Assembly (NCBI GenBank): GCA_977020255.1
Contig: CDROCS010000706.1
Span: 744,001-808,000, forward strand
Direction of reading: 5' to 3'
Length of the DNA: 64,000 nucleotides
Source of the DNA: Obrimoposthia wandeli
Taxonomy: Eukaryota
Shown here: positions 1,047-34,600 of the stretch, in pieces
Numbering within the stretch: position 1 is the first letter of the stretch
Layout: every line of letters starts with the position of its first letter
Notes under the pieces: generated by a model
Database searches by the model: none
What the model saw: the letters and a program-made list of their open reading frames with translations, nothing else
Told to the model about the DNA's origin: nothing
Translations under genes and position numbers: made by a program

Positions 1047-3540
1047 ATGGTAAGTTTATTGTTATTTTTCTGCTAATTTATTTCTTTCTAGAATTGCAAT
1101 ATGAACAAACAATTATGCTTTGAGGAGAGTCACAAGGAATGTGACGGAAAAATGAAGAGCTACTTTGGACAGACGTTCAACGGACAACAATTCTACGTAT
1201 GTCCAGTATGTCTCTCCGCGGAGGAGATTGATTGGCCGGAGTTTGTGGCGCGTCATCGTGTCCATATTCGTCATTTCCAGCAACGTGGCAAGAAGGCCAT
1301 CTTCCAGGATAGATCTGCTACTATTTCTCAAGATCGGGTTGCTGATCCAGTTGTTGCTGTTTCGCCAATTGCTGCCCCAATTGCTGTTCCAGTATCTACT
1401 CCAATTTCTGTTCCAGTTACTAGTCCAGTTGCTGTTCCAGTTACTAGTCCAGTTGCTTCACCACCATCTGCTGTACCAATGGTTCCAGTTATGCCTCCTC
1501 CAGTTGGTAGGATCCCCGCGCCGTTACCAGCATCTACCCGCAAGAGAAGTGTTATGCCCACTTCAGGTAGCTCTGTTGCGAAGTTTCCCAAAGTTAATGC
1601 TGTTAAGCGTAAGACTAGTCTTCGGGGCACGATTGAGACATTGTCATTAGATGTTTCTAATGACAATCTCATCGATTTACAAGTTCCTGTATCACTTTTG
1701 ACTAGCTTAAGGGACACAGTCAGCAAGTTTGCGACTTGCAAGGTTCAATTCGGGGTGCGTGTTGAATTTTCCAATATTGGAGAAACACGTGCTTGGAATT
1801 TTTCCAATAGAGGGCTCCCCATAGATGAGGGGTTTATAGATGCGGGGGTAGATGGGATCAACAAGAAGATTGAGAATTATTCTCAAAGTAGCAGTAATTG
1901 GGTAGTGAACCGCTTCCTGGAGATTTCGTTTGTTGTGACTAAAACAACAACAATGAACTATCTCCAGGGGAGTAGTTATATACCTACTCCATCTGAGTTA
2001 GCACTCTCACATTGCGTTATCAATGTGCAGAACTCAAACGCTTTTTGCTTCCTTTACAGTATCTTATCTGTACTTTTCTGCGAAGTATTTCGCTCTAATC
2101 CTCATCGGGTTAATCAATATGATGCCTTTTTGAGTCAATTAGTTTTTGATGAGAATGAGATGCCGATGCGTCTATGTATTATACCGCGATTTGAGAGAAA
2201 GAATCCATCTCTCTCAATCAACGTATTTACATTCAATAGGTTCTCTAATGTGCAAACAGATGGGGATATCTTCAAAAATCCCTATGTGGATGTCATTTAC
2301 AGAACCACAAACCCAGACGCTAAGGCAATCAATCTTCTCCTTTTAGAAAATAATGATAATTTTCATTATGTCGGTATTCCTAAACTCAATAGGCTGCTTA
2401 ATTATAGGAACAGAGGTGTATCTAATCGCATCCAGTGTACTTGGTCCCATAAGTGTCTTCATGGATTCCGGAGACCAATAAGTTACGCCAAACACGTTCC
2501 ACTCTGTAGGATGAATTTAGATCATACAACGCTTTATTCAATGCCTACAGAGAAGCATATTGAGTTTAAGGACTTTTCAAAAACGATTTCTCCACCTTTT
2601 GCTGTTTACGCGGACTTTGAGGCTGTGCTACCGCCGCATGGAATCCACCATCAGATTCAGCTTCCAATCTCGGCCAGTATGCTCATGTCTCCCGTTGCAG
2701 CCACGAGAGGGTACACACATGATTACTCGGTCTTTATCGGAGAATCTTGTGTGGTATCCTTTTTGCAGAAATTAGAGGACTTGGCGAAAGAGGTTGTACT
2801 CCCATGGTATAAGAAGCATGCGATCGAGGTGATGCGACAACTCACACAGGAACAGGTATCGAGTTTCAATGCAGCAAGAATCTGTTACCTGTGTAAGAAG
2901 AAACTCACAAAGAAAGTTCGAGATCACGATCACATGACTAGCGAATACCTGGGAGCTGCACATGCAAAATGCAACTTATCAAGGATAATTAATCGATCTT
3001 TTCCCGTCATTTTTCATAATCTGATGGGTTATGACATGCATCACATATTGAAGCACGTATTGTGCACGTTTCCTGACTGGAATGTCTCTGTTATACCTCA
3101 ATCAACAGAGAAATTCCAGGCTATGATGGTGTATATTGGAGGAGTCTGTATACCTTTCATCGATTCACTTCAATTTTTGAACAGCGGACTTGAAAATCTT
3201 GTGGAAAAACCTGGGTGTGACTCCTCTTACACATTCGGTCTTCCCGCAACATCTGGTGGGAGCCAAGGGAATCTTCCCATACGATATGGCAGTATCAGAG
3301 ACTGCTCTTCGCGCAATCACCAGCTTACCGCCAAAGTGGGATGAAAAGATCAAGCCAGTACAATATGAAATGGCAAAGATGGTCTGGACTCAGAGCGGCT
3401 GCTCATCGCTCTGGGACTATATGCTGGTCTATATGAAGATGGACGTCTACCTTCTAGCAGACGTGTTTACAGCATTCCGGACCAAGGCCATTGCTGACGA
3501 TGGATTGGAGCCACTCAATTTATTCTCCATCCCTGGTTTG
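1047..3540 (+). pseudogene. polB: Protein-primed family B DNA polymerase (pPolB): N-terminal/TP region, 3'-5' exonuclease and endonuclease VII-like insert; frameshifted and truncated before the polymerase motifs
   Basis: Motifs GSSYIPTP..CVINVQN...CFLYSILS, YADFEA (ExoI), CYLC..VRDHDH..YLGAAH.KCN (EndoVII), FHNLMGYD (ExoII), KGIFPYD, DVYLLADVF (ExoIII). +1 frameshift near 3204 joins ORF 1101-3344 to 3190-3561. Similarity ends after FSIPGL. Probable first exon is ATG 1047-1049 with intron 1050-1091. Confidence 0.9.
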
Positions 3541-7518: not shown

Positions 7519-9405
7519 TAATTATCAAGCTCGGACTTCGGTTTGGATTTCAGGAGTAGATTTATTGAATTTTCTCACTTTTGTTTAAATATTTATGGTT
7601 TTACAAATAAAGTAATCCTGTAAAGCATAATTTTAGTGAACTTATATTAATATCATTATAAAAAAAAATTAATATATCCCGTTTTGAAGAAATAAATTAA
7701 AATGAAAGAAACACAAAGGTTATAAGTGTTTATTGTAATAAGAAATTTTTATACAGAAATGAAACGAAAATCATTTATCCATTTAAATCAAGAGGACGAT
7801 TGTCTACAATATCGACGACTGTACTTGTAGCACTCTTTGAAAGAACTCCCTCCTTGTTGAAATCTTCCACATTGTTCTTTTGTGTAGTCCTCCCATGTTT
7901 TCTCAGAATTAATCCAAGTGACCGTGAAGGACGGGCTGTTTCAGCGAAATTCGATCGAAAGGTACTAAATGAATTAAGTTACATACATTGTCTAGACTGC
8001 GGATGAGTAACCTTCAACCCACACCGTTCTTTGACAGGAACACACAATATAACTTGTGAAGGTGAGAAAAATTGTTTTGGTGAATAATTTTTAGTTTTGC
8101 ATGCTATTTGTATTGACACCTGAGTTTAAGAAATGCAATGAAGCTGATGGACGAGGAGGTTTTAATGACATATTTCAGTGAAATAGTTTTTGTTATGATA
8201 AGTATAAATCAGGTTTGTCTTATTTAATGTAAAGAAGTGATAGATTTGAAAGAAAGAAACTTGGAGGGTTACTAAAGAATCCGTCAATCTACAGAATTTA
8301 ATAAAAATTAAGTTTTCATAGGTATGCCATTTTAAATACCTAAAAATAATAATTTTGTTATACAATTTAATGATGATTAATGCATAACTTTACTAAGAAA
8401 ATTGTAAATATACGAATAGTAATATATAGTGTCGGTACTAAATCAAAGGAACAGAGTCCCCGGGAGGGAGTCTCTCTTCCATTGAGTTAGTATTGACACT
8501 ATATGCCTCAAAATATGTTAATATATGATGATTTTTAAATCCATTCAAACAATATTCGAAATCATGCGATAAATTCAATTCATCACATCAGATTAAGTAG
8601 AAAGGCATACATGCAGCAACGAGAGGGAAGAAATAACGACTTTTGTCAAGCTACAGTAGCGTTATCTACAGTGAAGTGCAAAATTACGTACATCGCATAT
8701 TTATCTGAGCTCTTATAACAATCCTATTACATACTATGAAGATGATTGGCTCTGCATTGTCTTTCCTTCGATTCATCAAATACTGAATTTTCTTAGCTGT
8801 TTTTAATGCTCTACGCTTATTTCAGTATTTCTCCCCTTTCTATGTATCTTCAAACAAGCGACTGTGTCCTTATGAAAGCAATAGAGTAGGTTGCGAATGT
8901 TCTTGAACTTTTTAAAGCCAAACAATTTGGCCTGTCATTTGATGGGATGTAAAATGAAGCAGCAGCAGAATTTATGCAAATCTTATCGAGGCACCAAGAA
9001 CAAACAATCGTCAGACCCAGCATTTAAATACCTTCACTGGTACACTGAAAGTACATTATCGATTTATTGTTCAGACTTGATTTCACAGTTGAAAGATCGA
9101 TTGTGCACAGAAGTGCCAAAAGTGAAGGTATAAAATCTTGTGCTTTCCCTGTTAGACAATGTGACACTTGAAATTTGGGGGAAATATAATTCCTCGTAAG
9201 TAGGTGGATGTGTCCGGTCTAATCCACACCCCCCTCCCCCCTGTCCTTTAAAACCGTGCATATGTGTGTAGTGAAATTTCGTGTAGGTGTGTGGAGTGAA
9301 ATTTCACTCCACACACATGCACGGTTTTAAAGGACAAGGGGGTAAGGAACCCCCTCCCTAAAACTTTTTCGCCCCTATCGGCGCGAATGGCTCGGGACTG
9401 ACATT

Positions 9406-9636
9406 GGTCACAGACTAGTCCTGCGATGTAAGGATATCTCGCTCTCATATAGGTCACAGACTAATCCTGCGATGTACGGATATCTCGCTCTCATATAGGT
9501 CACAGACTAGTTCTGCGATGTACAGATATCTCGCTCTCATTTATGTCACACACTAGCCCTGCAATGTACAGATATCTCGCTCTCATATAGGTCACAGACT
9601 AGCCCTGCGATGTACGGATGTCTCGCTCTCACACCA
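9406..9636 (+). repeat. 46-bp tandem repeat (about 5 copies, runs into a gap)
   Basis: Unit GGTCACAGACTAGTCCTGCGATGTACGGATATCTCGCTCTCATATA. Mirrored at 15487-15651. Confidence 0.95.
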
Positions 9637-10056
9637 NNNNNNNNNNNNNNNNNNNNNNNNNNNNNNNNNNNNNNNNNNNNNNNNNNNNNNNNNNNNNNNN
9701 NNNNNNNNNNNNNNNNNNNNNNNNNNNNNNNNNNNNNNNNNNNNNNNNNNNNNNNNNNNNNNNNNNNNNNNNNNNNNNNNNNNNNNNNNNNNNNNNNNNN
9801 NNNNNNNNNNNNNNNNNNNNNNNNNNNNNNNNNNNNNNNNNNNNNNNNNNNNNNNNNNNNNNNNNNNNNNNNNNNNNNNNNNNNNNNNNNNNNNNNNNNN
9901 NNNNNNNNNNNNNNNNNNNNNNNNNNNNNNNNNNNNNNNNNNNNNNNNNNNNNNNNNNNNNNNNNNNNNNNNNNNNNNNNNNNNNNNNNNNNNNNNNNNN
10001 NNNNNNNNNNNNNNNNNNNNNNNNNNNNNNNNNNNNNNNNNNNNNNNNNNNNNNNN

Positions 10057-10200
10057 ACTCCACACCACACCACACCACACCACACCACACCACACCACAC
10101 CACACCACACCATGCCACACCACCGAAACTCCACACCACACCATACCACACCACGCCACACCACCGAAACACCACGCCACACCACAAACAACACCACCGA
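10057..10200 (+). repeat. (CACCA)n pentamer microsatellite
   Basis: Read directly from the sequence. Mirrored as (TGGTG)n at about 15295-15355. Confidence 0.95.
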
Positions 10201-10749
10201 AACACTCCACCTACCGTCCGCCCCTTCGGGGCGGGCTCCATTCTCGTGAAAATAACTACAAAAACATGCGCTACAGTATCACTTTACCTCACAACTATAC
10301 ATGTAAACGACCCGTGTCATACCCAAAACCCTAACATACACCGCACGCCCCTTTGGGGCGGGCTTCATTCTTGATCTACAGGCACGAAAAAACATTACAA
10401 AAAATAAATTATTTGAATAAGACGCAATTTTTTTTGCGCCAAATTTAAAATTTTCAACATGCTTTTTAAACAAAAAAATAAAAAATTTAAAATTGGCTTT
10501 TAAACAAAAAAATTATTTAAAAATTAAAATAAAATTGTTTACAAAATTTTTATAGTTTAAAAATAAAATTTCCAACATAATTTTTTACAACAACTTTTAT
10601 AGTTTAAAAAAATAATTTTACACAGAACTTTTATACTTTAGAATTTTAAACTTAAAAAAAGACGAATTGGGTACAAATATTTATTAAACCAAAGAGAAAA
10701 TTAGGTACAATAAATTTGTGACATACAAATTCAAACATACAAAAAACAA

Positions 10750-11218
10750 TTATTCAAGTGAAAAATCATCTGGATATCTATGATGTCCGTAGACAACTGA
10801 CCGGTTTTTCTCTACCCATTTTCTCTCATCGTCATTGCTACTCAATGCGATCTTACTCATATTTACGGTATAGAACTGATGATTAATTGAACTAATGCGT
10901 TGTTGTTGCACTCGTTCACTAACCCCACTATCATATGCAGCTAAATAATTCGCATGGCGTAGCACAGTCTGCTTAAGGCTAATTCCCTTTGCTCTCATCT
11001 GGGACTTTCCGTCTATAGTTTCTAAGCTATATGATTTGGAGCGTAAAAATACCCATTGCTTATATCTACATTGCTTACTCTCATCCTTAAACTTGCCTAT
11101 CGCAGTATTGGCTAAAGGATGGTTTATAGAAAATTTTGATGTGTCTAATAATCCATCTGAAATCATTGCAGACAACAGTGTAGCTTGCACGTATACATTA
11201 TGACACTTTAGAAAAAAA
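10750..11218 (-). pseudogene. polB: pPolB C-terminal fragment (left arm)
   Basis: FFLKCHNV...LLDTSKF..NHPL...IGKFKDE...LRSKSYS...RAKGIS...SKIALSSNDDER...YGH. This is the thumb region downstream of the YxDTDS motif, which is missing. Confidence 0.85.
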
Positions 11219-14200
11219 TTCTAATTTGGATATAAAAAGTTCGATTTTTAATCATTTTATGTTTATGGATTTTAGAATACATGTTTCGTGTATATTTCAG
11301 AATAATGTAAATTAAGATGCAAAGTTGAATCTTAGATCAAGGATTTTAGTTGACAAATGAATTTACTGTGTAATTTTTCTGAATAATGTAAATTTCGAAT
11401 TGGAAAGTTCGATTTTCAGTCAATTTATAGATTAGAAGATACATTTACTAAGGATTTTCAGAATAATGCAAATTATAATGCAAATAATTGATCATTTTTC
11501 AATGAATTTACCCATATTTCTATAAATTTTCTTTGATTTTAGTTTAAGGACAAAATTACCTTCAGAATAATAAGTTGTATTTACTGACGATTCTTATGTG
11601 CCAGCGCGTCAATAAAGTTTTCATGGTTTCTTANNNNNNNNNNNNNNNNNNNNNNNNNNNNNNNNNNNNNNNNNNNNNNNNNNNNNNNNNNNNNNNNNNN
11701 NNNNNNNNNNNNNNNNNNNNNNNNNNNNNNNNNNNNNNNNNNNNNNNNNNNNNNNNNNNNNNNNNNNNNNNNNNNNNNNNNNNNNNNNNNNNNNNNNNNN
11801 NNNNNNNNNNNNNNNNNNNNNNTTGTTTCTTTAAGTTTTCCTTAATACCTATTGACTTATAAGCAGCTATTTTCAACTATAAAATCAATAATTGGGAATA
11901 TGCCCACTAATCGTTATTACTCAATATCTAACCTAAACCTCTAACTTCTAATACTCTAGTTCTAATATTCTAATTCTAACACTAACATCATTTTCCAAAA
12001 TATATGCGAAAAATTTATAAGAAGATGGTAAAAGTTTGAATAATATCTCTGATTTTGTAAAAATTGTCTTCGTTATGACCGAAATATGAGTAAAATACTT
12101 ATGATTAATTTTTGGTATAACTCGCTTGAAGCACTATAAAGCTGAAATTCAATATGATCGCTTATATCATAATCTTAAATGACCGGAATTTTGATAAAAT
12201 ACGATTTCACTACAGTTTTAGAACAGTAGTCTTATTTCCGTTCTAAACCACCTAAATATCTTCTAACTCACATTAAATTTCCTTTCAAAGTAAAATATAT
12301 CCTATATTTTTTCTTCTGAATCCTACTAACCTTATATACATCGCTTTTATTTTCATTCAATCTAGCTATCTAGGCTATATTTACCAAAACCTCCTAAACA
12401 TCCCTTCTAAACCCTTCAAAGCTTTAATCTGAACCATCTAAACATCATCGTTAAATTTCCCTCTAAATTCATCTAATTTCTTCTTCTGAAACCTCTTGAA
12501 CTCCCTGTTAAATCTCCCTCTAAATTCCTTTAATTTCTTCTGAAACCTCCCCATATAAATTCTCCTCTGAACCAATTTAAGTTATATTTCCTCTTCTGAA
12601 ACCTCTTGAAATATCCGTTAAATCCTCCTTTTATCTCCTTTAAGGTTATATTTTCTTTGGAACCCTTTAATTTCCCCTATGAACCAATTTTAATTTCTTT
12701 TTTCTGAAACTTCCTAAATACTCCTTTTAAATACTTCTCTAAACGCCTTTTAAGGCTATATTTTCTGATACCTCCTAAACATTCATGCTAAATCTTTTCA
12801 AATCTATAATATATCTTCTGAAACCTCTTGAACACTTTTTCAATTTGTCTTTTATAACCATTCTATGCATTAATATTTCTTCTTTAACCTTCTAAATACG
12901 TCGTAAATTTCCTCTTCTATGTAATAAATTATTTTATAAACTTCCTAAATTCCATTCCTAAATCACTTCATAATCCAATCTAGGCTATATTTTTGAGACC
13001 TCCTAAAAGTATCGTTAATTTCTCCTCTGAACCGCTACTTATCTTTCTATGTATTAATTACTCTTCTAGAGAACCTTTTGAACAAATCATGAGTTTCTCT
13101 TCTAAAACTCTATCCATTATTTTCTATTCTTAAACCTTATAAACACTCATGTCATATCTCATCTAAATGTAACAAATCTCATGCATCTTCTTAATTTATC
13201 TTATAGAACCTTTTATGTATATGATGTCTTTACTAAACCGATTTATTTGAAGTAATAAATCGACTGGTTGTTGATGTTTGAAAATAAGTTTCCATAATAT
13301 TGATAACATCAATAAGCTTGTAGAGTTTTGCAAGAATTTTCTTGTTTGATATATCGATCAATGAAAAATTCTGTTTTGAGAATATAGTTATCAATAGACT
13401 CAAGTAATATGAATAAATTATGACTGAGATAAATACATACTCTAAACATTATTGAATAAATTATATCAATAAATGATACTTGAAAATAATTTTAGGTTTA
13501 AATGAATCGAAAGAGAGAATATAATTTAATCCATTTCTAGTCCTGATGTAATAATTTCTAAACAAAATGTTCCAATATAGTATCGATAATTTAATTAATT
13601 ATTTATTACATAGATTAATTTCCTTAAATAAGCTAATCTTCAAACAATATTCTTTGAAACTAATCATTTTTAGTAACAAAACTTTTACAGATTCTTTTAC
13701 AAAAAAACATTTTTAAAAGAAAGTAGAGAACATTTTAGATTAAATGAATTATTTTGAAATTTAATAAAATTCTTAGTTAAAGATGCAGATTAATAATATA
13801 CTCTTGATCGTAAATTGACTAATTGATCAAAGTAATCTCTCTAATTATCCGTATAATTGTCCGTAATAAACTCTCACTTATTGATCATTATATACTCTCT
13901 TCAAATTATATTTTTATTACACGGAGGAATCCTTTAAATATGTTGAAGAGAAATGCAATTAGTGCATCTACCATATAAGAAACCATGAAAACTTTATTGA
14001 CGCGCTGGCACATAAGAATCGTCAGTAAATACAACTTATTATTCTGAAGGTAATTTTGTCCTTAAACTAAAATCAAAGAAAATTTATAGAAATATGGGTA
14101 AATTCATTGAAAAATGATCAATTATTTGCATTATAATTTGCATTATTCTGAAAATCCTTAGTAAATGTATCTTCTAATCTATAAATTGACTGAAAATCGA

Positions 14201-14391
14201 ACTTTCCAATTCGAAATTTACATTATTCAGAAAAATTACACAGTAAATTCATTTGTCAACTAAAATCCTTGATCTAAGATTCAACTTTGCATCTTAATTT
14301 ACATTATTCTGAAATATACACGAAACATGTATTCTAAAATCCATAAACATAAAATGATTAAAAATCGAACTTTTTATATCCAAATTAGAAT

Positions 14392-14861
14392 TTTTTTCTA
14401 AAGTGTCATAATGTATACGTGCAAGCTACACTGTTGTCTGCAATGATTTCAGATGGATTATTAGACACATCAAAATTTTCTATAAACCATCCTTTAGCCA
14501 ATACTGCGATAGGCAAGTTTAAGGATGAGAGTAAGCAATGTAGATATATAAGCAATGGGTATTTTTACGCTCCAAATCATATAGCTTAGAAACTATAGAC
14601 GGAAAGTCCCAGATGAGAGCAAAGGGAATTAGCCTTAAGCAGACTGTGCTACACCATGCGAATTATTTAGCTGCATATGATAGTGGGGTTAGTGAACGAG
14701 TGCAACAACAACGCATTAGTTCAATTAATCATCAGTTCTATACCGTAAATATGAGTAAGATCGCATTGAGTAGCAATGACGATGAGAGAAAATGGGTAGA
14801 GAAAAACCGGTCAGTTGTCTACGGACATCATAGATATCCAGATGATTTTTCACTTGAATAA
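14392..14861 (+). pseudogene. polB: pPolB C-terminal fragment (right arm) with 2-nt frameshift
   Basis: Near-identical reverse complement of 10750-11218, with AGATATATAAGC instead of AGATATAAGC near 14545. Confidence 0.85.
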
Positions 14862-15486
14862 TTGTTTTTTGTATGTTTGAATTTGTATGTCACAAATTTA
14901 TTGTACCTAATTTTCTCTTTGGTTTAATAAATATTTGTACCCAATTCGTCTTTTTCTAAGTTTAAAATTCTAAAGTATAAAAGTTCTGTGTAAAATTATT
15001 TTTTTAAACTATAAAAGTTGTTGTAAAAAATTATGTTGGAAATTTTAAATTTGGCGCAAAAAAAATTGCGTCTTATTCAAATAATTTATTTTTTGTAATG
15101 TTTTTTCGTGCCTGTAGATCAAGAATGAAGCCCGCCCCAAAGGGGCGTGCGGTGTATGTTAGGGTTTTGGGTATGACACGGGTCGTTTACATGTATAGTT
15201 GTGAGGTAAAGTGATACTGTAGCGCATGTTTTTGTAGTTATTTTCACGAGAATGGAGCCCGCCCCAAAGGGGCGGACGGTGGGTGGAGTGTTTCGGTGGT
15301 GTTGTTTGTGGTGTTTCGGTGGTGTGGCGTGGTGTGGTATGGTGTGGTGTGGAGTNNNNNNNNNNNNNNNNNNNNNNNNNNNNNNNNNNNNNNNNNNNNN
15401 NNNNNNNNNNNNNNNNNNNNNNNNNNNNNNNNNNNNNNNNNNNNNNNNNNNNNNNNNNNNNNNNNNNNNNNNNNNNNNNNNNNNNN

Positions 15487-15651
15487 GTACATCGCAGGGC
15501 TAGTCTGTGACCTATATGAGAGCGAGATATCTGTACATCGCAGGACTAGTCTGTGACCTATATGAGAGCGAGATATCCATACATTGCAGGACTAGTCTGT
15601 GACCTATATGAGAGCGAGATATCCGTACATCGCAGGACTAGTCTGTGACCA
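15487..15651 (-). repeat. 46-bp tandem repeat, inverted copy
   Basis: Reverse complement of the 9406-9636 unit. Confidence 0.95.
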
Positions 15652-16873
15652 ATGTCAGTCCCGAGCCCTTCGCACCGACAGGCGCGAAAAATTTGTAGGG
15701 GGGGGGGGTTAACCCCCCATCCTGTCCTTTAAAACCGTGCATGTGTGTGGATGTAATGTCGAAGCTGTATACAAAATTTAAATTAGCCAATCAGCAATGG
15801 TTCAGTCTGTATCTTCTATCTCTAGGGAGCTGTCAAAGTACGTTATAGTCTTTTCCGAAAGATCCCTTTAAATCTAAAGGTGCTTTTGACTATAGATGGT
15901 TCCATTGCTACCATTGAATGAAGTTTTAGCAGTCTTTGGCTTATGTGTGTTGTAGTTTACATAGATATATTTAAAACAGCATTTTAATTATATATTAAAC
16001 GAATCTTTTTAAAAAGGCATTGATGGGTGGCATGTTTAATTTTCTTTGTGCATTCTGTTGGTTAATTATAATTCGGATGGTTTACTTTCATTTCATTGTA
16101 TCATAGTTCAAACAAATATTTGCTACATTTTGACTATGTGCGTTTTATAAACCAATTGCATACTTTTTAAATAAATGTTTGATAAAATCAGTAACTGACA
16201 ATTGAAAGTGCGTAATACTCATTCAGAAACTCCACATAACATCATACATATTTAAGAAATCAACCCATTACACGCAAAAATGAAAAATTCCTATTTCAAA
16301 TACACATAAATCAGCCATTTATAAATGAGAAAGAAAATTTTAAAGATGCCATACTCATTTAATCTAATCGATTGTAATTTAACATTTTCCAAATCTGACT
16401 CGTCGTCGTTGTGATTATTTTCTTTTGTAGCTTGAAGTAAAGTCAAAATGCTTTTTTCAATAAATTTTTCCAACACAATCTAACCATAGTTTCGAATTGA
16501 ATGAATTTGTTCTTTGTTGTATATCTTTGGATTCTCTACTATGAACACAATTAAAAGCAATTCAGATCACAGCTTCAAACTCTGAAGATGACCTTTAAGT
16601 ACGCTTGTCATTCATTCCAGCTAGATTAGGGAATTTATCCCTAGACAAATTCAAGCTATATTCAGAATTTCCTATCCTAATTTTTCATTCTCATATCAGT
16701 TTTTCATGGGGTAAAAATATTTAATAAAAACACTGAAATATTGCCTGAAACATTGTTGCCAGAAACTGTAAAGAGCATTCCCTCGGCGACCAATGAGGAG
16801 CACCAACGGGAGAGTGTTCGTGACAGCGAGTGTGTATATCAGGAGCTGTTTTTGGGGTCTACTGCAGCCAAAG

Positions 16874-19204: not shown

Positions 19205-19725
19205 TTTTTTCATTCAGCAAACGGTCAAATATTGAGGCAGTTTCGTACTATACGAGATTATATCCAAATAACTCTCAAAGATAGAATATACAATAATTGG
19301 GTGGATGTTCTACCAGAATGTATGCTTAATTCTACATATCAAAAGTCAATTGGTACAACTCCAGCAGAAGTTGTATTTGGAAAAAGATTTTTAAAAGAAT
19401 GTATACCGAAAATACGTGATGAAGGCCAAGATATAATCAATGATACGAAAAGAATATTTAAAGTTGGAGATATCGTTTTAGTCAAAATATATGTGAGACT
19501 GAAAGATGATGATAGATACGACGGACCAAGAACTGTAGTTAAACAAAAACATGAAAGAAATTTTGAAAAAATTGTGATAAAAAATAAGAAACGGTAAAAA
19601 ATATCGTTATTTCAACTCGAAGGTGGTAGGCAAGAAGTGATGTGACTGAGTGAATCAAAGCTACGAGACAAAAAGTTTGAGCCATAAAAAACACAAAGAG
19701 AACGAGACATAAAAAGGGGATAGAA
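19205..19725 (+). mobile_element. Ty3/Gypsy relic: integrase C-terminus and polypurine tract
   Basis: NGQ..RQFRTIRD...W.DVLP...LNSTYQKSIGTTPAEVVFG...FKVGDIVLVK...RYDGP (GPY/F-like). AAAAAGGGGA at 19711-19720. Confidence 0.75.
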
Positions 19726-19734
19726 ACACACAAT

Positions 19735-21903
19735 TTATGTCACTGCTTGATGCATAGTTAGCGACAGCAGCACTCCATAGTCCTCTGTTCTTCTGGCATT
19801 GGTAGCTCTCGATCTTGTTGGCGCATCAGCTGGATTGTGCTCGGTTCGCACAAATTGCACCTTGATCCTTTTTAAAGTAGCCATCATCTGTACAGCTATT
19901 AGAGTCCACCAGTGTTGGACTTTGGCAGGTATTCTCCTATTTCGAATACTCCAAACTAGCGCTAGGTTATCGCATAGGATAATGTCTCCCGTAGTCGCTT
20001 TCCACATAGCTAATAACACTGCTCGTGCTTCTTGCAAATATATATTTTCCTCTTTCAATTTTGCAGTAAGTTCAATCTGAAAAGGTTGCGTCTTGGTTAC
20101 TGCTACTGTAGATTTGGTAGCATCTGTTGCCCAAACTTGTCCTGCTGTCTTTTTCCACTTCCATGTGGCAGCATACTTTTTAAGATTGTAATAACAAATC
20201 TTTCTTAAGTCGGACTTCATATAATTTGCCACATATGGCCACTTGAGCACATTACTTACGTAATTTAGATATCCAATTGCGTCATCAGTGAACTCTTCTT
20301 TTTCTATGATGTCATCTGCAGTGTGCCACTTCTGCTTGCTAATGCTGACCTCCTGTCTTTTGAGATCAATGATCATGCCACAATACTCGATTTTTGCAAT
20401 AGGCTTCAATTGTGATTTCTTCCAGTTAATTTGAAGACCCCATGTCCTGAAAAAGTTAGAGATTTCACTCCACACAGGGGCATTTGGCTTTGCCACGATG
20501 AGAATATCATCAATGTGGACATGTGCCAAGTCAACTATCCATCTATCTTTTAATTGTTGCAAGATTCTCGAGATTGTCCATTGTAGAATGGCTGGGCTTT
20601 GTCGAAGGCCCATTGGAAGACGCGTAAAGCGGTAATACTGATTGTCGTTCCAAAAGTTGGTGAGATGCCTTGCTGCTTGTCTAATTTTTACCTGATAGAA
20701 GGCTCCTTTGAGGTCAATTCTAATGGCCAATCTATCATTAGGCAGAAGCTGTAATTTGTTGGCCAAATTTGGAATTCTCATGTGCAACTGCGGCAAGTGT
20801 GGCGTCAAATGCTTGAAGTCCACAATTAATCTTCTGAGACTAGAATTTGCTTTGGGCACCATTCTCACTTGGGAGCAAAATGGTCCTTTAGTAGACTTTT
20901 CTATGATTCCTGCTTTAAATAGAGCGTGAACACATGCATTGATGTGTTGCTTCTCTTCTGTTGGCACATTATATCTCTTTCTTTGTCTGGAGGCCTTGAT
21001 TGAGGCGAAGGGCGCATAACCCTTGGTAGCCATCATACTCATTCTTCCATCGAGATCTACATCACTATAGTCATCCGGCATCTGAAGGGTCTGAGAAGGC
21101 ATACTATCATAATACTCCTGTTGGAGTTTCTCTTGAGCCATTTTAACTTTGCGGGTTTCATGAAAAGTGATCCAACCACTTGAGTCATTGTTCATGACTT
21201 TTCTGGCTTCAGTTGCTCTTCCTTCTTCTAAAATATTTCTATTACCAGCTTGTGGTAGCGTATTGCCATTGGAATTGAAGTAATCATCTATAACATCTCG
21301 AGTTAGGACTGGTAAAGGTTGTCTATTAAAGACATCGGCCGACATAATACTGACTAACATATAGTCGCGCCACCAGTGAACGTAAAACGGATCACTGTGG
21401 GAGGCTAGCGCCTCGAGTAAACGGCGGGCGTCCAAGGCCTCTGCGCGAGTAGTTACCTCTACCACGTGGGAAAGGTCGAGACTTGGCAGCTGCTGCTGCT
21501 TTCCTGGCTTGATAGCGAGAGATCTCTTCTGGGGTGATATCTGTGATACGAGCAAGGTTTGACGCTTTGGCCTCCGTTGCTGCCCATCCAATGGTGACTG
21601 AGCTAAATAACATTGCTGCTCGCTCGGCGAGGTGCTCCTCGATGGTGAAGTAGTCGTGGAGTTTGAGCAAATCGTGGACACGCAGCAGAGATTCGAACTC
21701 ATGCCACGATCTTCTGTCCTTGTCAAGGAGGAGCTTGCTAAGCTCTGCTCTGCTATCTCCTTCCAAGAGCTCTTGTTTCCGCTGCTGCGGTGTTTCTGCG
21801 CGTGGCAGGTCGTATTGACGTGGTGGCACACTGGCCTTGGCTCTCTGTTCGGTTTCGATCCTGTCAAGTCTTTGCATGATGTCTCGTAACGTAGGTTCGG
21901 CAT
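19735..21903 (-). CDS. Reverse transcriptase-RNase H polyprotein (alternative start ATG 21360)
   Basis: RT: ALFKAGIIEKS...VPK...RLIVDF, IDLKGAFYQV, RLPMGLRQSP, HIDDILI, IEYCGMIID. RNase H: ATDAT, NIYLQEARA, LCDN, HNPADAPTR. Confidence 0.9.
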   Translation of the reverse strand: MPNLRYETSCKDLTGSKPNREPRPVCHHVNTTCHAQKHRSSGNKSSWKEIAEQSLASSSLTRTEDRGMSSNLCCVSTICSNSTTTSPSRSTSPSEQQCYLAQSPLDGQQRRPKRQTLLVSQISPQKRSLAIKPGKQQQLPSLDLSHVVEVTTRAEALDARRLLEALASHSDPFYVHWWRDYMLVSIMSADVFNRQPLPVLTRDVIDDYFNSNGNTLPQAGNRNILEEGRATEARKVMNNDSSGWITFHETRKVKMAQEKLQQEYYDSMPSQTLQMPDDYSDVDLDGRMSMMATKGYAPFASIKASRQRKRYNVPTEEKQHINACVHALFKAGIIEKSTKGPFCSQVRMVPKANSSLRRLIVDFKHLTPHLPQLHMRIPNLANKLQLLPNDRLAIRIDLKGAFYQVKIRQAARHLTNFWNDNQYYRFTRLPMGLRQSPAILQWTISRILQQLKDRWIVDLAHVHIDDILIVAKPNAPVWSEISNFFRTWGLQINWKKSQLKPIAKIEYCGMIIDLKRQEVSISKQKWHTADDIIEKEEFTDDAIGYLNYVSNVLKWPYVANYMKSDLRKICYYNLKKYAATWKWKKTAGQVWATDATKSTVAVTKTQPFQIELTAKLKEENIYLQEARAVLLAMWKATTGDIILCDNLALVWSIRNRRIPAKVQHWWTLIAVQMMATLKRIKVQFVRTEHNPADAPTRSRATNARRTEDYGVLLSLTMHQAVT

Positions 21904-22087
21904 CTTCTGGCATATGGGATTGTTGCACTGAATTTTCGTAATCCACCGACTTTGATCTCAGGTTATAACGTTCCGTCTTCTCGAATTGCAATTCTTCTTC
22001 ACTAAAATACTCAGGGTCGTCAGTTATTTCGGACCACGACAGAGGTTTCTGTGCTGATTTATATGATGAGTATAGGTCTGTGAACAA
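21392..22087 (-). CDS. Core/gag-like protein with Arg/Gly-rich basic C-terminal tail
   Basis: Helical body with GWAA motif and tail SRPFPRGRGNYSRRGLGRPPFTRG. First ATG at 21913, but the frame is open upstream to about 22206. Confidence 0.65.
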   Translation of the reverse strand: MFTDLYSSYKSAQKPLSWSEITDDPEYFSEEELQFEKTERYNLRSKSVDYENSVQQSHMPEDAEPTLRDIMQRLDRIETEQRAKASVPPRQYDLPRAETPQQRKQELLEGDSRAELSKLLLDKDRRSWHEFESLLRVHDLLKLHDYFTIEEHLAERAAMLFSSVTIGWAATEAKASNLARITDITPEEISRYQARKAAAAAKSRPFPRGRGNYSRRGLGRPPFTRGASLPQ

Positions 22088-22964
22088 ATCGAGGCCGTCT
22101 TCTTCGTCTTCTTGGAAATATTTACCTTGCGACGTGTTGAGGGCTATCCAGGTACTCGCACAAGTGTGAGTAAGTAGATTATCTAAATCTCCTCTTCGTG
22201 GTAATATTTACCAAAAAATAACTTCAAATTTTATAAAAAAACTTTGAAATTTAGAAAAAATTATCTTAATTTTACAAAATAAGACTGGCTATTTTATTCA
22301 GTTATAAACTGCTGATGTACAATAACTAATTTTAGACTGACTATCGATTTATAACTTTAAAATATTTCTTTGTAAATTTTTACGAATATTTAAAATTTCC
22401 ATAAACGAACTGCTATGTTTTGAATCTTTACTTCATTTCTAGTATCTATTAATTTATTTTAAAATTTTCATTTTTATACATCAGATTTTTAATGAACATA
22501 AATATATCTTTGTCCATAGTTCATAAAGTTCACTGGCAACTCTATTAATCATTTTGCATCTTTTAGTTGCACAATTTATATTTTGTAAATAATGATATCG
22601 ACCCAATACAACATAAACTGTTGGGATCCTTGATATTGATATTAGACTTTCCGACACAATAACTTCCATTTGAATAATTTCTAAAATTCAAGTGATTTTT
22701 AAAATATTAGCCATTGATATAGTCACTATATTATAGTGGATCTATATCTAAATATTTACTGAAAAACTTTCTTCTCCAATTTTAAAAAGAAGTTTCTTCT
22801 ACAATATTTTGATAGCTCATACTTTAAGTAGCACCAAAAACAACATTTTAATTTAATAATATACGTGTACTTTTAAACAAAAGTAGACGATTTAATTTAA
22901 ATAACTTTTGATTTTCTATATGATTTACATACGTTTATTTAAAAATAATAGAAAATTATACAAA

Positions 22965-28579: not shown

Positions 28580-30013
28580 AAACTTCTGTAGCCTTCAGTG
28601 ACTTTGTATGAAATAAACACTATTTAAATAGAGTATTCAGTCGTTTATTTCACTCTGTCTCTCCTTTCCTTTTTTAGTTGGATGAAATATTTCATAACAT
28701 ATCATTTTGTTTTCAATAATACAGATATCACTATGATGTTTAGCAAATATAATCGATAGCATAACCATGTTAAGACAGATAAAGGCATGTACCCCCTTAA
28801 ATAATGGCAATAGTCAATTTATAAATTGATTACATTAAATAATAATTTTTAAACCAAATTTGCTTAACAATATCTGTGAAAGAGTAAATATCTAAAATGA
28901 AGTTCTACTACAGTTGTTTCTGCGTTCATCGTCGAAATAAAACACAAAAATGACCCCACAATTTTTATTAAATAAAAACTCACGCACGCTGGGTTTTTTT
29001 CTTCTTTCACAACAATTCAAATTTTCACCCTATTTTTTCAATTCATTCTTTTAAACAAAATCTATCTTTTTTGTCACTTCTTTTAACATAATTATTATTA
29101 TTATGTTAACACACGCACACAACTCTAAAAACATCCGATCTCATGTCCGAACATTCCCCTTCCCCTTGTTCAAACCCGATCTCCTGGTTTATCAACCTAT
29201 TCTGTTCACTCGCTTCCACCTTCAACGGACACATCTTTACTACCGGTCTCACACACTCATTCCCTCCTACATTTACTACACAGCTCCTGACTTCTGCTTA
29301 CTTATTCGCTCTTAATTCCCATATTTTCCCGACAAGCCAGACTCCCTGCTCATTCTTCTTGTCTAGTACCCACACAAGTTGTCCCTCACTCAACGGGTTT
29401 TCTTTTCGTTTCCACTTACTTCTCCTAATCCAGGTGGGTATCATCTCACTCATCCATCTTTTCCACACATGACTAACGATCTCTTGTATTCTACACCACC
29501 GATGGCCGAGTTCTCCGTCCCCCATTAATGCTGTCTCATTCCCCAAACCTTCTTCTCTTCCACTCACCATGAAATCTTTTGGTCTTAACGGTAATTCTTC
29601 CTTGCTATATGCAGACCGAAAAGTGATTAGTCGAGAGCTCAGCAGTTCCTCAACTTCAACAAATACTGCTCTCAGCTCTTCATCACTTATATCAGAATTT
29701 ATCAACACCATCCCAATCGCTTCTTAGCGCTCTTCATCAAACTTTCAAACACTCCCCCAAAGTGTGGCGCGGCTGGTGGGTTAAATATCCAACGAATCTC
29801 TTCCCGTTCCAACTGCTTTCTCATACTGTAGTCGTCAATTACAATTTCACTTTTTACGTTAGCTGTCCCTTGAAAGTTTGTGCCGTTGTCGGAAATAACC
29901 AACTGCAGCCTACTCCGTTTTCCCATAAATCTCTTTAAAACCCTTATAAACCCGTCCAACTCTAAATTCCAAGCCATCTATAGATGCACCGCCCGTGTTT
30001 GTAAGCATGTAAA

Positions 30014-31637: not shown

Positions 31638-34600
31638 TAAATATCGTTTATTTCAAACACGTTCTCTCTCTTGTTTTGTAAAATAAGGTCCCGCAAAATC
31701 CACGCCCACTTTATCAAATGCTCGAAGTGGCGATAAAAATCTGAATATAGGTAATGGTGCCATTTTTGTTATCGTCCCTCGCCCACTCCATCGTTTACAT
31801 TCAAACATTTCATCTGATAATTTCGTATTACCACTCTAGCCTTTTCAATCCACATCTCCCGACTTAATTCACTCAGTATGTGGCTTACTCCGGTTGCATG
31901 TTTCTTGGACTGTTGTACCTTTCTGACAATTAACCACGTCCCCAAACTGTATATTTCTAATATTATCGGACACCATGTCTGTTCGGGAAGTATTTCTGTC
32001 TGAATTATACGGCTATTACTTTTCATTAACCTATCCTCATCTAATATCGGATTTAACCCTTATACTTTCTTTACGTATTTGCTTTCCCCTAGTTAAGGCA
32101 TTAATTTCATCGGAATAATATTCCTGCTGATCTCGCTTTATTATCGCTGATAGTGCATCTTCTAATTTATCTACAGATAATATAACTTTCTCACGTTGGT
32201 CTATCCTGACTCTACAATTATCTACAAAACGCTGTACCCATGCTCGTACTCGTACTAAACGTTTCCAATCTGAGAAGGTATTTGAAATACATCCGTATGC
32301 CCAACATAAGTTTTCATTGTTGATACTTGACCAAAAAACAGGTAGTACGTTTCATCTTCATATTTGAGTGTTTCATTTTTATTCCTTCATTTGGCCACCA
32401 CTCTTTGTCTCTTTTCAAAAACTCAGATCCCTCCCACTAATACTTGGATCAAATCATATCTTCTATATTCATTCCTCTCGATAACAAATCAGCGGTATTC
32501 GTTTGGTAGGAATATAGTGCCATTGACTAGATCTTGTACTTCGTTGAATGTTAAATACTATATTTGTTACAAATGTTTTAAATAACCTATTGTGTTGTTG
32601 TATCCAACTAAGTATAGTCATACTGTCCCTCCAAAATTTAATCTCGCTTATCTCTATATCTAGGACCTTGGCCATCTTCTTTCCCAAATCCAAACCTACA
32701 CATGCTGTCATCCACTCTAATCTAGGTAAACATAGTGTAGATATCGAAATCACTCTTGCTTTTCCCATTACCAGTGTGCTACATACCTCACGTTTCCCTC
32801 GTTCACACGCATACAACATCGCCCCATAGATCATCATTGGAGCATCCACAAAAAGATGATAATCCATCACAGTCGTTTCTTTGTCTTTTAAGCATCACAC
32901 CATTCGAACTTTATCCAATAAATGACACTCATTACTCCAACTGGAATTTGATGCTATCAACTCATCTTCCAATTCTTCATATTAGCCCGCTGTATTCAAC
33001 CTTATATCTTGCATTGATCATTTTCCCTTGAATTGTGAATGCACTGATCATCCCGAACGGATCATAAATTCTCGCTATCAGACTAAGAAAGGTTATTTTT
33101 GTAACTCGATCCAACTTCATTTCTTTAACATAAATTTTAAAAACATCCTACAGTGCATTCCATTTTACTCCTAAGGTTTTTGTTTCCACATCTTCAGTTT
33201 CTTATATCTTCCATTCAATCGCCCTTTCATCACTTTGTACTGTTTCCATCAATTCTTGAATAGTACTCAGCCATTTTCTAGCACTCATTATTGCTGCTGT
33301 CCATAATCTTGTAGTTCCCACCTTAGTTTTATCCCTTGATCAACTGTAGCTACAGAATCAATGATATCATTCATATATGTAGAACATAGAATAGTTTCCG
33401 CGGCTTTTGATGTTTTCTAGAGTTTTCTTGAGTAATTAATTGTGCCAAGTATGGCAATGCATTTAATCCAAACACCAGTATATTAAACTCAAATTTACGT
33501 AACTCACCGTCTTGCCACCACAAAAACCGCAGATATATTTTATCCTCGTATACTTTTATTTGGAGATACATTTCCCGAATATCACATAGTAATGCAATCC
33601 GATGTTTTTAAAATCGTGTTAAGATCGTCACTAGATCACCCTGTAACTTTAGTCCTCCTTCAATCGCATCATTCAGACTCAAATCCCGCACTTTGGCAGT
33701 GACATTAAAAACAATTCGGATCTTTGTCGTGGTCTTATCGCGACGTATAACCGGAAAATGTGGCAATAACCACTTAGTCTCATTTTCCCTTGATTTCGAA
33801 ATCATCGTCATATATCTCATGTCGTCATATATCATCTATGGCTCGGCTATATTCCGTTTTTCCGATTCAAACTTTCCAATAGACTTTTTACCATATCTTT
33901 ACTTTAGCATAACTCTTCTTTCATCGGTGTCCATGGTATCCTCACATGATACTTGCGCCGTCATACACAATCGTGTGTTTCGTTTTCTGGGTCAGTCTTT
34001 CATCTTCGATTGACATTATCGTTTCATTCATACATTCCTCATTAACCCAAAATTTGCAGCATCTTGTTTAATTGTTCGCATTGTGCCAGATACGTTCTTG
34101 CGAAATTCGTTGTATTTCCTCTACTACCATCTATCATTCCCATGCACGTCCAACCCACCGGTGTCAACCGAGCCACCGAATCTTCATCTCTTCCAGAAAC
34201 TTATATAATAACTCGATGCGCTCTCATGCAATCTGTACCTATCAAGACACCAACTTTTGCGATCTCCGTACTTTTTGTGGGAATTGTATATTTCTGAGAT
34301 GCGGCCATTGTCCTGCGAATTTATCCCACTCGTATACTGTCTAGTCACCAGTTACGTTATTTACTGTTAGAGCATCTAATATTAAATTTTCTTTACTGTC
34401 CACACTTTCAACATTCACATTGATTGATGTAGCTCTTATCTCTTGCACCTTCCATCTAACAATTTCCACTGGAACTATCTGTTCTGGTCCCTCTAATCTC
34501 AATGCCTTTGCTACCCAGTTGTTGACATAACTCGTCGTGCTGGCATCATCTAATAGTGCGTTTAACCACACTGTCTTTCCTCGATTTTCCAGAATGACAG

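What the first reader, a model, noticed from the sequence alone, without database searches (positions are those of the whole stretch)
19735..22212. Uninterrupted hepadnavirus-like (HEART/nackednavirus-type) reverse-transcribing element with no integration enzyme
Seen: about 2.5 kb with a core/gag-like ORF ending in an Arg-rich tail, overlapped in another frame by a 722-codon RT-RNase H ORF. Neither ORF has a stop or frameshift, while neighbouring TEs are decayed. No aspartic protease, DDE integrase, tyrosine recombinase, endonuclease, LTR or envelope ORF is visible. Known: hepadnaviral RNase H reads DAT...IHTAE...DN...NPADDPSR, whereas DIRS reads DAS...IN.LE...DN...N..AD.LSR. This element reads DAT...IYLQE...DN...NPADAPTR. 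HALFKAGII, just before the RT, also resembles the hepadnaviral T3 motif HTLWKAGIL, although LTR elements have a similar stretch. Inference: an endogenised non-enveloped hepadna-like virus or retroelement in an invertebrate, with about 150 aa ahead of the RT as a candidate terminal-protein domain.
Basis: partly seen in the sequence, partly recalled or inferred. Interest (0 to 1): 0.88.

Follow-up and report, generated by a model that had tools for sequence, protein, structure and literature searches.

The report
Intact hepadnavirus-like (HEART-type) genomic insertion
A 2.6-kb insertion in an AT-rich animal genome carries two unbroken genes, a capsid-like one and a reverse transcriptase/RNase H, and belongs to the little-known HEART group, retroelements thought to be the nearest non-viral relatives of hepatitis-B-type viruses.

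Summary
On the minus strand, 19604-22212 is a GC-richer block (0.44 against 0.25-0.32). It holds a 271-codon open frame with an Arg-rich tail. A 722-codon RT-RNase H ORF overlaps that frame for 170 codons. Neither has a stop or frameshift. No protease, integrase, tyrosine recombinase, methyltransferase, envelope gene, LTR or ITR was found.

The polymerase belongs to a distinct family of RT-RNase-H-only proteins. Family scores are RT 189-233 bits and RNase H 45-122 bits. DIRS-like controls score 153-170 and 18-24; Ty3/gypsy scores 126-130 and at most 27. Several members pass Pfam's threshold for the hepadnaviral polymerase C-terminal domain; the window's copy falls just short (19.4 against 22.4 bits). 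RT motifs match published tick HEART sequences by eye, not the motifs shared by hepadna-, nackedna- and proto-nackednaviruses.

ORF1 has homologues upstream of the polymerase in eight related loci. Three relatives are complete 2.9-3.8-kb two-gene units that close on themselves or repeat in tandem.

The truncated-DIRS reading is rejected. A terminal-protein domain, epsilon and a hepadnaviral capsid fold remain unshown.

Verdict: a new, unusually intact member of a known but poorly sampled kind.

The parts
19604..22212 (-). The whole element as integrated (2609 bp)
   Evidence: GC-richer block, 0.35-0.63 per 100 nt against 0.16-0.32 outside. The edge is sharp at 22205-22212 and softer at 19600-19735. 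The bounds were sharpened using a candidate 8-bp flanking repeat, which is weak evidence.
21392..22207 (-). ORF1 open frame, 271 codons plus stop: core/gag-like protein. The first ATG is at 21913, so the true start is probably missing.
   Evidence: The 98 codons ahead of the first ATG are open at chance 2e-3. No Pfam or PDB sequence match.
21503..21790 (-). Conserved helical domain of ORF1 (aa 140-235 of the open frame)
   Evidence: Aligns with the ORF upstream of the polymerase in L001, L003, L005, L006 and L007, with invariant E170, R196 and W208. A profile of it finds the upstream ORFs of L008 (E 4e-7) and L004 (E 1.4e-5), which were not in the seed.
21395..21502 (-). Basic Arg-rich C-terminal tail of ORF1
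   Evidence: Basic tails also end the ORF1s of L003, L005 and L007.
19735..21903 (-). ORF2: P-like polymerase, 722 aa, unbroken
   Evidence: AF2 with a 34-sequence alignment gives pLDDT about 90 over aa 280-700. All catalytic residues are present: RT D397, D465, D466; RNase H D594, E625, D645, D693.
21394..21903 (-). N-terminal 170 codons of ORF2, overprinted on ORF1 in another frame
   Evidence: The frame is open over the overlap at chance 5e-4. Predicted disordered, pLDDT 31-42. The same nesting occurs in L003 and L006.
20878..21393 (-). Pre-RT region (aa 171-342), function unknown.
   Evidence: Low confidence, a few helices. Similarity to relatives starts only at about aa 229-265. No conserved Tyr. 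No PF00242 hit.
20368..20877 (-). Reverse transcriptase domain (Pfam RVT_1, aa 343-512). The box before the DD reads H, not Y.
   Evidence: H in 21 and Y in 11 of 34 family members.
19798..20145 (-). RNase H domain (aa 587-702)
   Evidence: PF00336 DNA_pol_viral_C at 19.4 bits against a cut-off of 22.4. Relatives reach 24.5-51.6 bits. The family RNase H profile gives 110 bits. The ORF ends 17 aa later.
19604..19734 (-). 3' untranslated tail, pyrimidine-rich, no poly(A)
   Evidence: No stable fold, z +0.93. No Rfam match.
22213..22220 (.). Candidate 8-bp flanking direct repeat; its partner is at 19596-19603
   Evidence: It is A-rich, and several equal matches occur nearby, so it may well be chance.
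22190..22212 (-). 23-nt stretch at the extreme 5' end, repeated (20 of 23 bases) at 22104-22126
   Evidence: BLAST E 0.49 against the window, so not significant. Unexplained.

Best explanation
This is one nearly full-length integrated DNA copy of a HEART-type (hepadnavirus-like) reverse-transcribing element.

Shown:
- The unit is a two-gene module. ORF1 is a helical protein with a basic nucleic-acid-binding tail. ORF2 is a polymerase with a long pre-RT region, an RT and an RNase H, and it stops right after the RNase H.
- All catalytic residues are present.
- No integration, protease or envelope gene exists, and there are no terminal repeats.
- The first two ATGs lie 10 nt apart, one in each frame. 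The first has C at -3 and the second has A at -3.
- Relatives include complete 2.9-3.8-kb two-gene units that close on themselves or repeat in tandem.

Inferred:
- One transcript would yield both proteins by leaky scanning.
- ORF1 protein would package that RNA together with the polymerase. Reverse transcription would give unintegrated DNA, as in hepadna-type viruses.
- Having no integrase, the element would enter the chromosome only by accident, through host end-joining of a linear DNA form.
- The copy starts inside or at the 5' end of ORF1 and stops about 130 nt after the polymerase. Any promoter in the short non-coding stretch of the unit is therefore cut away from the genes, and the copy is probably not autonomous.
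- The unbroken frames and the foreign base composition point to a recent arrival.
For: ORFs and overlap.

Domains.

A distinct family:
- The top HMMER hits are 450-730-aa RT-RNase-H-only proteins.
- Their ORFs end 0-69 aa after the RNase H.
- Family RT profile: 189-233 bits for family loci, 153-170 for DIRS-like proteins, 126-130 for gypsy, and 38-141 for 47 generic metagenome loci.
- Family RNase H profile: 45-122 bits against at most 27.

Link to hepadnaviral polymerase:
- PF00336 matches 17 of 34 relatives, best E 1.1e-13, and four pass the curated cut-off.
- None of 5 DIRS-like controls matches it.
- HBV Protein P has the second-highest query-normalised TM-score in BFVD.

HEART-like motifs, by eye against the published alignment: set against the proto-nackednavirus, nackednavirus and hepadnavirus motifs.

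ORF1 is a conserved partner of the polymerase.

Relatives that close on themselves:
- L005: a 2933-bp unit repeated 1.8 times at 99.96% identity.
- L006: an exact 30-nt terminal overlap.
- L001/L002: permuted ends.

Another integrated relative in AT-rich DNA: L009.

Composition.
Against: - The window's own PF00336 score is below the cut-off.
- My trees are crude neighbour-joining trees with weak support: family against outgroups 144 of 300; window with P0009 134 of 300.
- In the RT-only tree, DIRS-like sequences fall inside the same 75-member clade. They are also the next-best scorers on the family RT profile.
- No HEART or hepadnaviral sequence could be placed in a computation, so the HEART assignment rests on by-eye motif agreement.
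- The ORF1 fold is unresolved.
- No epsilon-like RNA, direct-repeat pair or terminal redundancy was found.
- No terminal-protein signal was found.
- Copy number in the host genome is unknown.
- A possible 8-bp target duplication would fit staggered-cut insertion better than end-joining.
- The closest relatives share only 37-40% identity.
Confidence: 0.55

Rival explanations
1. It is a HEART-type genomic retroelement that multiplies within the germline genome by a regular but unknown insertion route. That route might use another element's or the host's nicking activity. It would not be a one-off capture of an episomal form.
For: HEART elements are described as retroelements whose mobilisation is unresolved (PMC12440569). 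A candidate 8-bp flanking repeat exists. Relatives sit in eukaryote-type contigs among other TEs: P0011, L004 and L009.
Against: There is only one copy in 64 kb. The flanking repeat is A-rich and at chance level. There is no poly(A) tail or terminal repeat. ORF1 lacks its start, which suits a broken-off linear copy.
Confidence: 0.25
2. It is a co-opted host gene pair. An old insertion would have been kept intact by selection for a host function.
For: Both frames are unbroken while neighbouring TEs are fragments. A meeting report mentions HEARTs in wasps in a possibly symbiotic role (PMC6282271).
Against: GC is 0.44 inside AT-rich DNA, which suggests little time for the element to drift toward the host composition. 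ORF1 has no start at the head of its frame. No orthologue or expression data are at hand.
Confidence: 0.08
3. It is a truncated DIRS/Ngaro-type element that has lost its tyrosine recombinase and terminal repeats.
For: DIRS-like RTs are the next nearest on the family RT profile, at 153-170 bits. They fall in the same broad non-gypsy clade in the RT-only tree. A foreign TE fragment abuts the 3' end.
Against: - A recombinase from a bona fide DIRS-like locus (L058) detects the recombinase remnant in L057 (E 2e-5) but nothing in the window or in nine family loci. The methyltransferase query gives the same result.
- The polymerase ends 17 aa after the RNase H, as in the family. DIRS-like polymerases run on for 148-189 aa.
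- DIRS-like RNase H domains score only 18-24 bits on the family profile.
- Complete family units of 2.9-3.8 kb have no room for a recombinase.
Confidence: 0.05
4. It is an assembly chimera or contaminant. Episomal or foreign viral DNA would have been joined into the host scaffold by the assembler.
For: The composition steps are sharp. Relatives occur as free small contigs in metagenomes.
Against: There are no N runs at either junction; the gaps are elsewhere. The copy is less than one unit and starts inside ORF1. L009 shows the same kind of block inside AT-rich DNA in an independent assembly.
Confidence: 0.05
5. It is the internal remnant of a Ty3/gypsy or BEL/Pao LTR retrotransposon.
For: The best solved-structure sequence hits are Ty3, CaMV and MLV RTs. 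LTR-element debris is nearby.
Against: There is no protease, integrase or LTR. No gypsy-type RNase H domain is present; gypsy proteins found by the same search carry PF17917 and PF17919. Gypsy RTs score 126-130 bits on the family profile against 231 for the window.
Confidence: 0.02

Closest known systems
HEART, hepadnavirus-like retroelements (Gong & Han 2018, Mol Biol Evol 35:2254; Ixodes tick sequences in the supplements of PMC12691608)
   Same: Integrated in an invertebrate-type genome. RT-RNase H polymerase without protease or integrase. Three RT motif positions agree by eye with the published HEART rows, including one HEART row with H in the box before the DD/DN. No known means of insertion.
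   Different: Published HEARTs are few and often carry mutated conserved RT residues (PMC12440569). This copy has every catalytic residue and both frames open. Its partner ORF1 and its relatives that close on themselves are not features I could find described for HEART. The original paper is not in the library.
Proto-nackednaviruses: Pliego virus, Toolik virus and rotifer-associated lineages (PMC11551314, PMC12691608)
   Same: A two-gene C plus P layout, no envelope gene, and units of about 3-3.5 kb. Overlapping frames. A core protein detectable only by structure or secondary structure.
   Different: All five published lineages share RT motifs with hepadna- and nackednaviruses that this family lacks (against 117). 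Epsilon and the direct-repeat pair are reported for them but were not found here. None of my related loci appears in that paper's lists.
Hepadnaviridae and nackednaviruses (Blubervirales)
   Same: An RNase H domain of the PF00336 type at family level. A long pre-RT region of about 260-330 aa. A capsid-like protein with an Arg-rich tail. Polymerase and core frames overlap, with separate start codons. No integrase.
   Different: No detectable terminal protein, epsilon or direct repeats. No envelope or X gene. Different RT motifs. Here the overlap covers almost all of the translatable ORF1.
DIRS/Ngaro/PAT tyrosine-recombinase retrotransposons
   Same: The next nearest RTs by profile score. No DDE integrase or protease. 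A gag-like first ORF.
   Different: No recombinase, methyltransferase or terminal repeats. The RNase H is of a different type.
Ty3/gypsy and Caulimoviridae reverse transcriptases
   Same: The general RT-RNase H fold. The best solved structural matches are CaMV and Ty3 RT, E about 1e-19.
   Different: No protease, integrase, movement protein or LTR. A different RNase H family in Pfam.

Membership tests
HEART (hepadnavirus-like retroelements) | RT groups with HEART and Blubervirales, not with Ortervirales or DIRS, in a phylogeny | tested here: inconclusive
   No HEART sequence could be fed to the tools. NJ on RT plus RNase H separates 37 family members from 2 DIRS-like and 1 gypsy sequence in 144 of 300 replicates. 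Profile scores show clear gaps.
HEART (hepadnavirus-like retroelements) | RT motif signature of the published HEART rows | tested here: met
   A by-eye comparison of three motif windows of the window and family with the Ixodes HEART rows in the paper's supplementary alignment. This is not a statistical test.
HEART (hepadnavirus-like retroelements) | Polymerase with RT and hepadnavirus-type RNase H, and no protease or integrase | tested here: met
   The window's own PF00336 score (19.4) is under the cut-off (22.4); four relatives pass it.
HEART (hepadnavirus-like retroelements) | Integrated in an invertebrate genome | tested here: met
   Contiguous with AT-rich DNA that holds BEL/Pao debris, a Polinton-like polB ORF and a trypsin-like exon. 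The host species is not known to me.
Blubervirales (Hepadnaviridae, nackednaviruses, proto-nackednaviruses) | Terminal-protein domain with a priming tyrosine ahead of the RT | tested here: inconclusive
   No PF00242 match. No conserved Tyr in 23 aligned pre-RT regions; the one conserved aromatic column is mostly Phe. Model confidence is below 50.
Blubervirales (Hepadnaviridae, nackednaviruses, proto-nackednaviruses) | Epsilon stem-loop and the DR1/DR2 direct repeats | tested here: inconclusive
   No Rfam match at E up to 10. The 5' 313 nt fold no better than shuffles, z +0.55. The only short repeat is not significant. Published work says epsilon in the proto-nackednaviruses cannot be found by similarity, so absence here proves little.
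Blubervirales (Hepadnaviridae, nackednaviruses, proto-nackednaviruses) | Core protein with the hepadnaviral capsid fold | tested here: inconclusive
   No Pfam or PDB sequence hit for seven ORF1s or their profile. The AF2 model has pLDDT 45, is all-helical, and gives no fold match.
Blubervirales (Hepadnaviridae, nackednaviruses, proto-nackednaviruses) | RT motifs conserved across all three groups in the published alignment | tested here: not met
   The window and its family differ at the motif after the first conserved Asp region and in the box before the DD.
Blubervirales (Hepadnaviridae, nackednaviruses, proto-nackednaviruses) | Small circular episomal genome of about 3-3.5 kb | not testable with these tools
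   The window copy is integrated. Relatives L005, L006 and L001/L002 are circular or tandem units of 2933, 3775 and about 3565 bp.
DIRS/Ngaro/PAT | Tyrosine recombinase ORF | tested here: not met
   Pfam on the ORFs. A tblastn search with the recombinase of control locus L058 finds L057 but not the window or the family loci.
DIRS/Ngaro/PAT | Methyltransferase domain after the RNase H (DIRS1-like) | tested here: not met
   The ORF ends 17 aa after the RNase H. There is no methyltransferase similarity.
DIRS/Ngaro/PAT | Split direct or inverted terminal repeats | tested here: not met
LTR retrotransposons (Ty3/gypsy, BEL/Pao) | LTRs, aspartic protease and DDE integrase | tested here: not met

The most novel reading that the evidence does not exclude
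The window's element and its relatives form a HEART-like lineage that is not merely fossil. It would include present-day episomal, circular two-gene genomes: non-enveloped reverse-transcribing agents of invertebrates. These would be distinct from proto-nackednaviruses and marked by an H in place of Y in the RT catalytic box. This copy would be a very recent germline capture of such an agent, with every catalytic residue still in place.
Probability: 0.3. Interest if true: 0.8.

Novelty: new member of a known kind. Interest (0 to 1): 0.6.

Why it matters
HEART elements are held to be the retroelement stock from which hepatitis-B-type viruses arose. Published examples are few and damaged, and nobody knows how they move.

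An unbroken copy with its capsid-like partner gene gives clean sequence for phylogeny and structure prediction. Relatives that look like free 3-kb circles bear directly on whether this lineage is a transposon, a virus, or both.

The H-for-Y catalytic box shared by two thirds of the family is an unusual RT trait and worth a specialist's look.

Tried and rejected
- The word-indexed protein search was too insensitive. It gave one relative and otherwise gypsy proteins, and only two ORF1 relatives.
- The exact-protein look-up of ORF2 found nothing, so the source genome is not in that collection.
- The IMG/VR scan with ORF2 found nothing.
- The metagenome scan with A5 gave 47 loci, all generic RTs outside the family.
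- Fold searches of the ORF2 model (BFVD, PDB) hit every reverse-transcribing group and do not discriminate.
- The ORF1 model was too poor to search; that search returned noise.
- PDB profile searches with ORF1 and with the RNase H gave no useful hits.
- Rfam and RNA folding gave no epsilon. The microRNA-like hits in L001 come from a palindromic contig end.
- A first Biopython tree run timed out.
- The 23-nt repeat at the 5' end and the 8-bp flanking repeat are at chance level.
- The Gong & Han 2018 paper is not in the library.

Consensus lines printed by the alignment tools were not used. Virus rows in the paper's supplementary alignments were only read by eye at three motif positions, and none were copied into any tool.
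Full report
**What is there**

On the minus strand, ORF2 runs 19735-21903. It is 722 codons from its ATG, in a 740-codon open frame. At the local base composition such a frame is open by chance with probability 8e-20.

A second frame is open from 22207 to 21395, 271 codons. It ends in a basic tail with 8 Arg in the last 40 residues.

The two frames overlap for 170 codons. The polymerase frame stays open across that overlap at chance 5e-4.

The first ATG of the block (21913) is in the ORF1 frame, with C at -3. The second (21903) opens ORF2, with A at -3.

ORF1 has no ATG in its first 98 codons, yet that stretch is open at chance 2e-3. ORF1s in relatives are 255-312 aa. The copy therefore most likely lacks the true start of ORF1.

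GC is 0.44 across 20-22 kb, against 0.25-0.32 on either side. The step is sharp at 22205-22212.

Neither frame contains a stop or a frameshift.

**What is absent**

- Pfam gives RVT_1 (E 6e-19), a sub-threshold match to PF00336, the hepadnaviral polymerase C-terminal domain (19.4 bits against a cut-off of 22.4), and one further weak match (DUF1543, E 0.02), which I take as chance.
- NCBIfam gives nothing.
- No protease, DDE integrase, tyrosine recombinase, endonuclease or envelope gene is present.
- No LTR or ITR lies within 16-26 kb.
- No second copy is in the window.
- The abutting plus-strand ORF 19232-19597 looks like the tail of an LTR-element integrase. It belongs to another, decayed element.

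**The family**

A full HMMER scan of 1.84 billion representative proteins gave 9 hits below 1e-30. The top tier is made of 450-730-aa proteins that hold only RT and RNase H, at 22-37% identity to the window.

Profiles built from this tier separate it cleanly from everything else the same searches returned.

| Group | Family RT profile (bits) | Family RNase H profile (bits) |
|---|---|---|
| Family loci | 189-233 | 45-122 |
| DIRS-like proteins | 153-170 | 18-24 |
| Ty3/gypsy | 126-130 | at most 27 |
| 47 generic metagenome loci | 38-141 | 15-22 in five loci; none reported in the rest |

Family polymerases stop 0-69 aa after the RNase H. The window's polymerase has every catalytic residue: RT D397, D465 and D466; RNase H D594, E625, D645 and D693.

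The residue in front of the catalytic DD is H in the window. The same is true of 21 of 34 family members; 11 have Y. It is a family trait, not damage.

**DIRS test**

Six second-tier hits carry a methyltransferase after the RNase H.

One of them, P0155 in L058, is followed by a 264-aa Phage_integrase ORF. It is therefore a true DIRS-like element. Its recombinase detects a remnant in L057 (E 2e-5). It detects nothing in the window or in nine family loci, and the methyltransferase query behaves the same way.

None of the five DIRS-like proteins scanned one by one matches PF00336.

In a neighbour-joining tree on RT plus RNase H, the 37 family sequences split from the DIRS-like and gypsy outgroups in 144 of 300 replicates. 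In the RT-only tree the DIRS-like sequences sit in the same broad non-gypsy clade. So DIRS is the nearest outgroup I sampled, but the window is not a truncated DIRS element.

**Link to hepadna-type viruses and to HEART**

PF00336 matches 17 of 34 relatives, best E 1.1e-13. P0037, P0008, P0010 and P0159 pass the curated cut-off.

Fold searches with a good ORF2 model (pLDDT about 90 over aa 280-700) hit caulimo-, foamy-, retro- and hepadnaviral polymerases alike. HBV Protein P has the second-highest query-normalised TM-score (0.43). This does not discriminate between the groups.

The literature defines three relevant groups:
- HEART, retroelements related to Blubervirales, with an unresolved means of moving and often with damaged RT motifs.
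- Proto-nackednaviruses, 3.2-3.5-kb circular C plus P genomes.
- Nackednaviruses and hepadnaviruses.

I read the published RT alignment by eye. Hepadna-, nackedna- and all five proto-nackednavirus lineages share motifs that the window's family lacks. The Ixodes HEART rows agree with the family at the three motif windows I compared, and one HEART row has H before the D-D/N.

I could not put HEART sequences into a computation, so this assignment is by inspection.

**ORF1**

Its C-terminal half aligns with the ORF upstream of the polymerase in L001, L003, L005, L006 and L007, with three invariant residues and a basic tail. A profile of that half finds the upstream ORFs of L008 (E 4e-7) and L004 (E 1.4e-5), which were not in the seed.

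The two genes are therefore a conserved pair.

No Pfam or PDB sequence match exists for any ORF1. The AF2 model is all-helical but unreliable (pLDDT 45) and finds no fold. The hepadnaviral capsid fold is untested, not refuted.

**Pre-RT region and cis elements**

About 320 aa precede the RT. The first 170 are overprinted on ORF1 and predicted disordered. The rest has a few low-confidence helices.

Relatives also have 234-328 aa ahead of the RT; P0019, with 631, is the exception. Little of this region is conserved and it has no conserved Tyr.

No Rfam family matches, including any epsilon model. The termini fold no better than shuffled sequence. There is no terminal redundancy.

**Forms of the relatives**

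- L005 is a 2933-bp unit present 1.8 times at 99.96% identity.
- L006 has an exact 30-nt end overlap, giving a 3775-bp circle. Thirty is k-1 if that Logan contig was built with k=31; the k value is my recollection, not a tool result.
- L001 and L002, from two samples, have permuted ends that imply a unit of about 3565 bp.
- In L003 and L006 the polymerase frame is open across the ORF1 frame, as in the window.
- L009 (40% identity), L004 and the contig of P0011 are integrated copies in eukaryote-type DNA. In L009 the polymerase is cut short after the RT, and no family-type RNase H is detectable.

**Most likely working**

Shown: a two-gene capsid-plus-polymerase module with intact active sites, no means of integration, and relatives that exist as closed or tandem units.

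Inferred:
- Both proteins are translated from one RNA by leaky scanning.
- That RNA is packaged and reverse-transcribed into unintegrated DNA.
- A linear form is joined into the chromosome by host repair.

The copy begins at or inside the head of ORF1 and ends about 130 nt past the polymerase. At 2609 bp it is about nine tenths of the smallest complete unit seen. Any promoter in the short non-coding part of the unit is therefore separated from the genes.

A candidate 8-bp flanking repeat would argue for staggered-cut insertion instead, but it is A-rich and at chance level.

**Novelty and standing**

HEART has been known since 2018, so this is a new member of a known kind.

What stands out is its intactness, the conserved ORF1 partner, the H-for-Y catalytic box, and relatives that look episomal. 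None of these relatives appears in the proto-nackednavirus paper's lists.

I stopped and used it nowhere. The consensus lines that the tools print were not used.

Noticed in passing
L005:1-5335; L006:1-3805; L001 and L002: Relatives of the element are complete two-gene units that close on themselves or repeat in tandem. L005 is a 2933-bp unit repeated 1.8 times at 99.96% identity. L006 has an exact 30-nt terminal overlap, giving 3775 bp. L001/L002 have permuted ends, giving about 3565 bp. Their RT motifs are HEART-like, not proto-nackednavirus-like. They may be undescribed episomal agents.
   Followed up: partly
window 20368-20877 (RT) and alignment A1: The residue before the catalytic DD is His in 21 of 34 family members and Tyr in 11. 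This is an unusual RT catalytic box that seems to be a lineage trait.
   Followed up: partly
window 9300-11633 and 13976-15750: A large near-perfect inverted repeat, with arm segments of 573 nt at 100% and 522 nt at 98%. It has 46-nt tandem arrays at its outer ends in opposite orientation and three N gaps. It is either a foldback element or an assembly artefact.
   Followed up: partly
window 1101-3344 (+): An intact 747-aa ORF with a weak match to organellar/viral type-B DNA polymerase (Pfam E 5.9e-4) and no PDB sequence hit. It may be a Polinton/Maverick-like element.
   Followed up: partly
window 19232-19597 (+): A 121-codon fragment that looks like the C-terminal tail of an LTR-element integrase. 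It abuts the 3' end of the element on the other strand. It has no Pfam hit.
   Followed up: partly
window 29298-29711 (-) and 32469-32870 (-): BEL/Pao retrotransposon debris (DUF5641 and Peptidase_A17), in a region of strong negative GC skew at 28-34 kb.
   Followed up: no
window 57354-57755 (-): An ORF fragment with a trypsin-domain match (E 6.8e-7), probably an exon of a host serine protease gene.
   Followed up: no
window 47970-49266; 63300-64000; 41451-41873: Satellite arrays: a 29-nt unit repeated about 45 times, a 76-nt unit repeated about 9 times and running off the window end, and a 140-nt unit repeated 3 times at 100% identity.
   Followed up: no
L058:659-4800: A bona fide DIRS-like element from a metagenome: an RT-RNase H-methyltransferase polymerase followed by a 264-aa tyrosine recombinase. 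It was used here as the positive control.
   Followed up: yes
L001:1-229: The contig end is a 229-nt palindrome that draws spurious plant microRNA matches from Rfam. It is most likely an assembly artefact.
   Followed up: no
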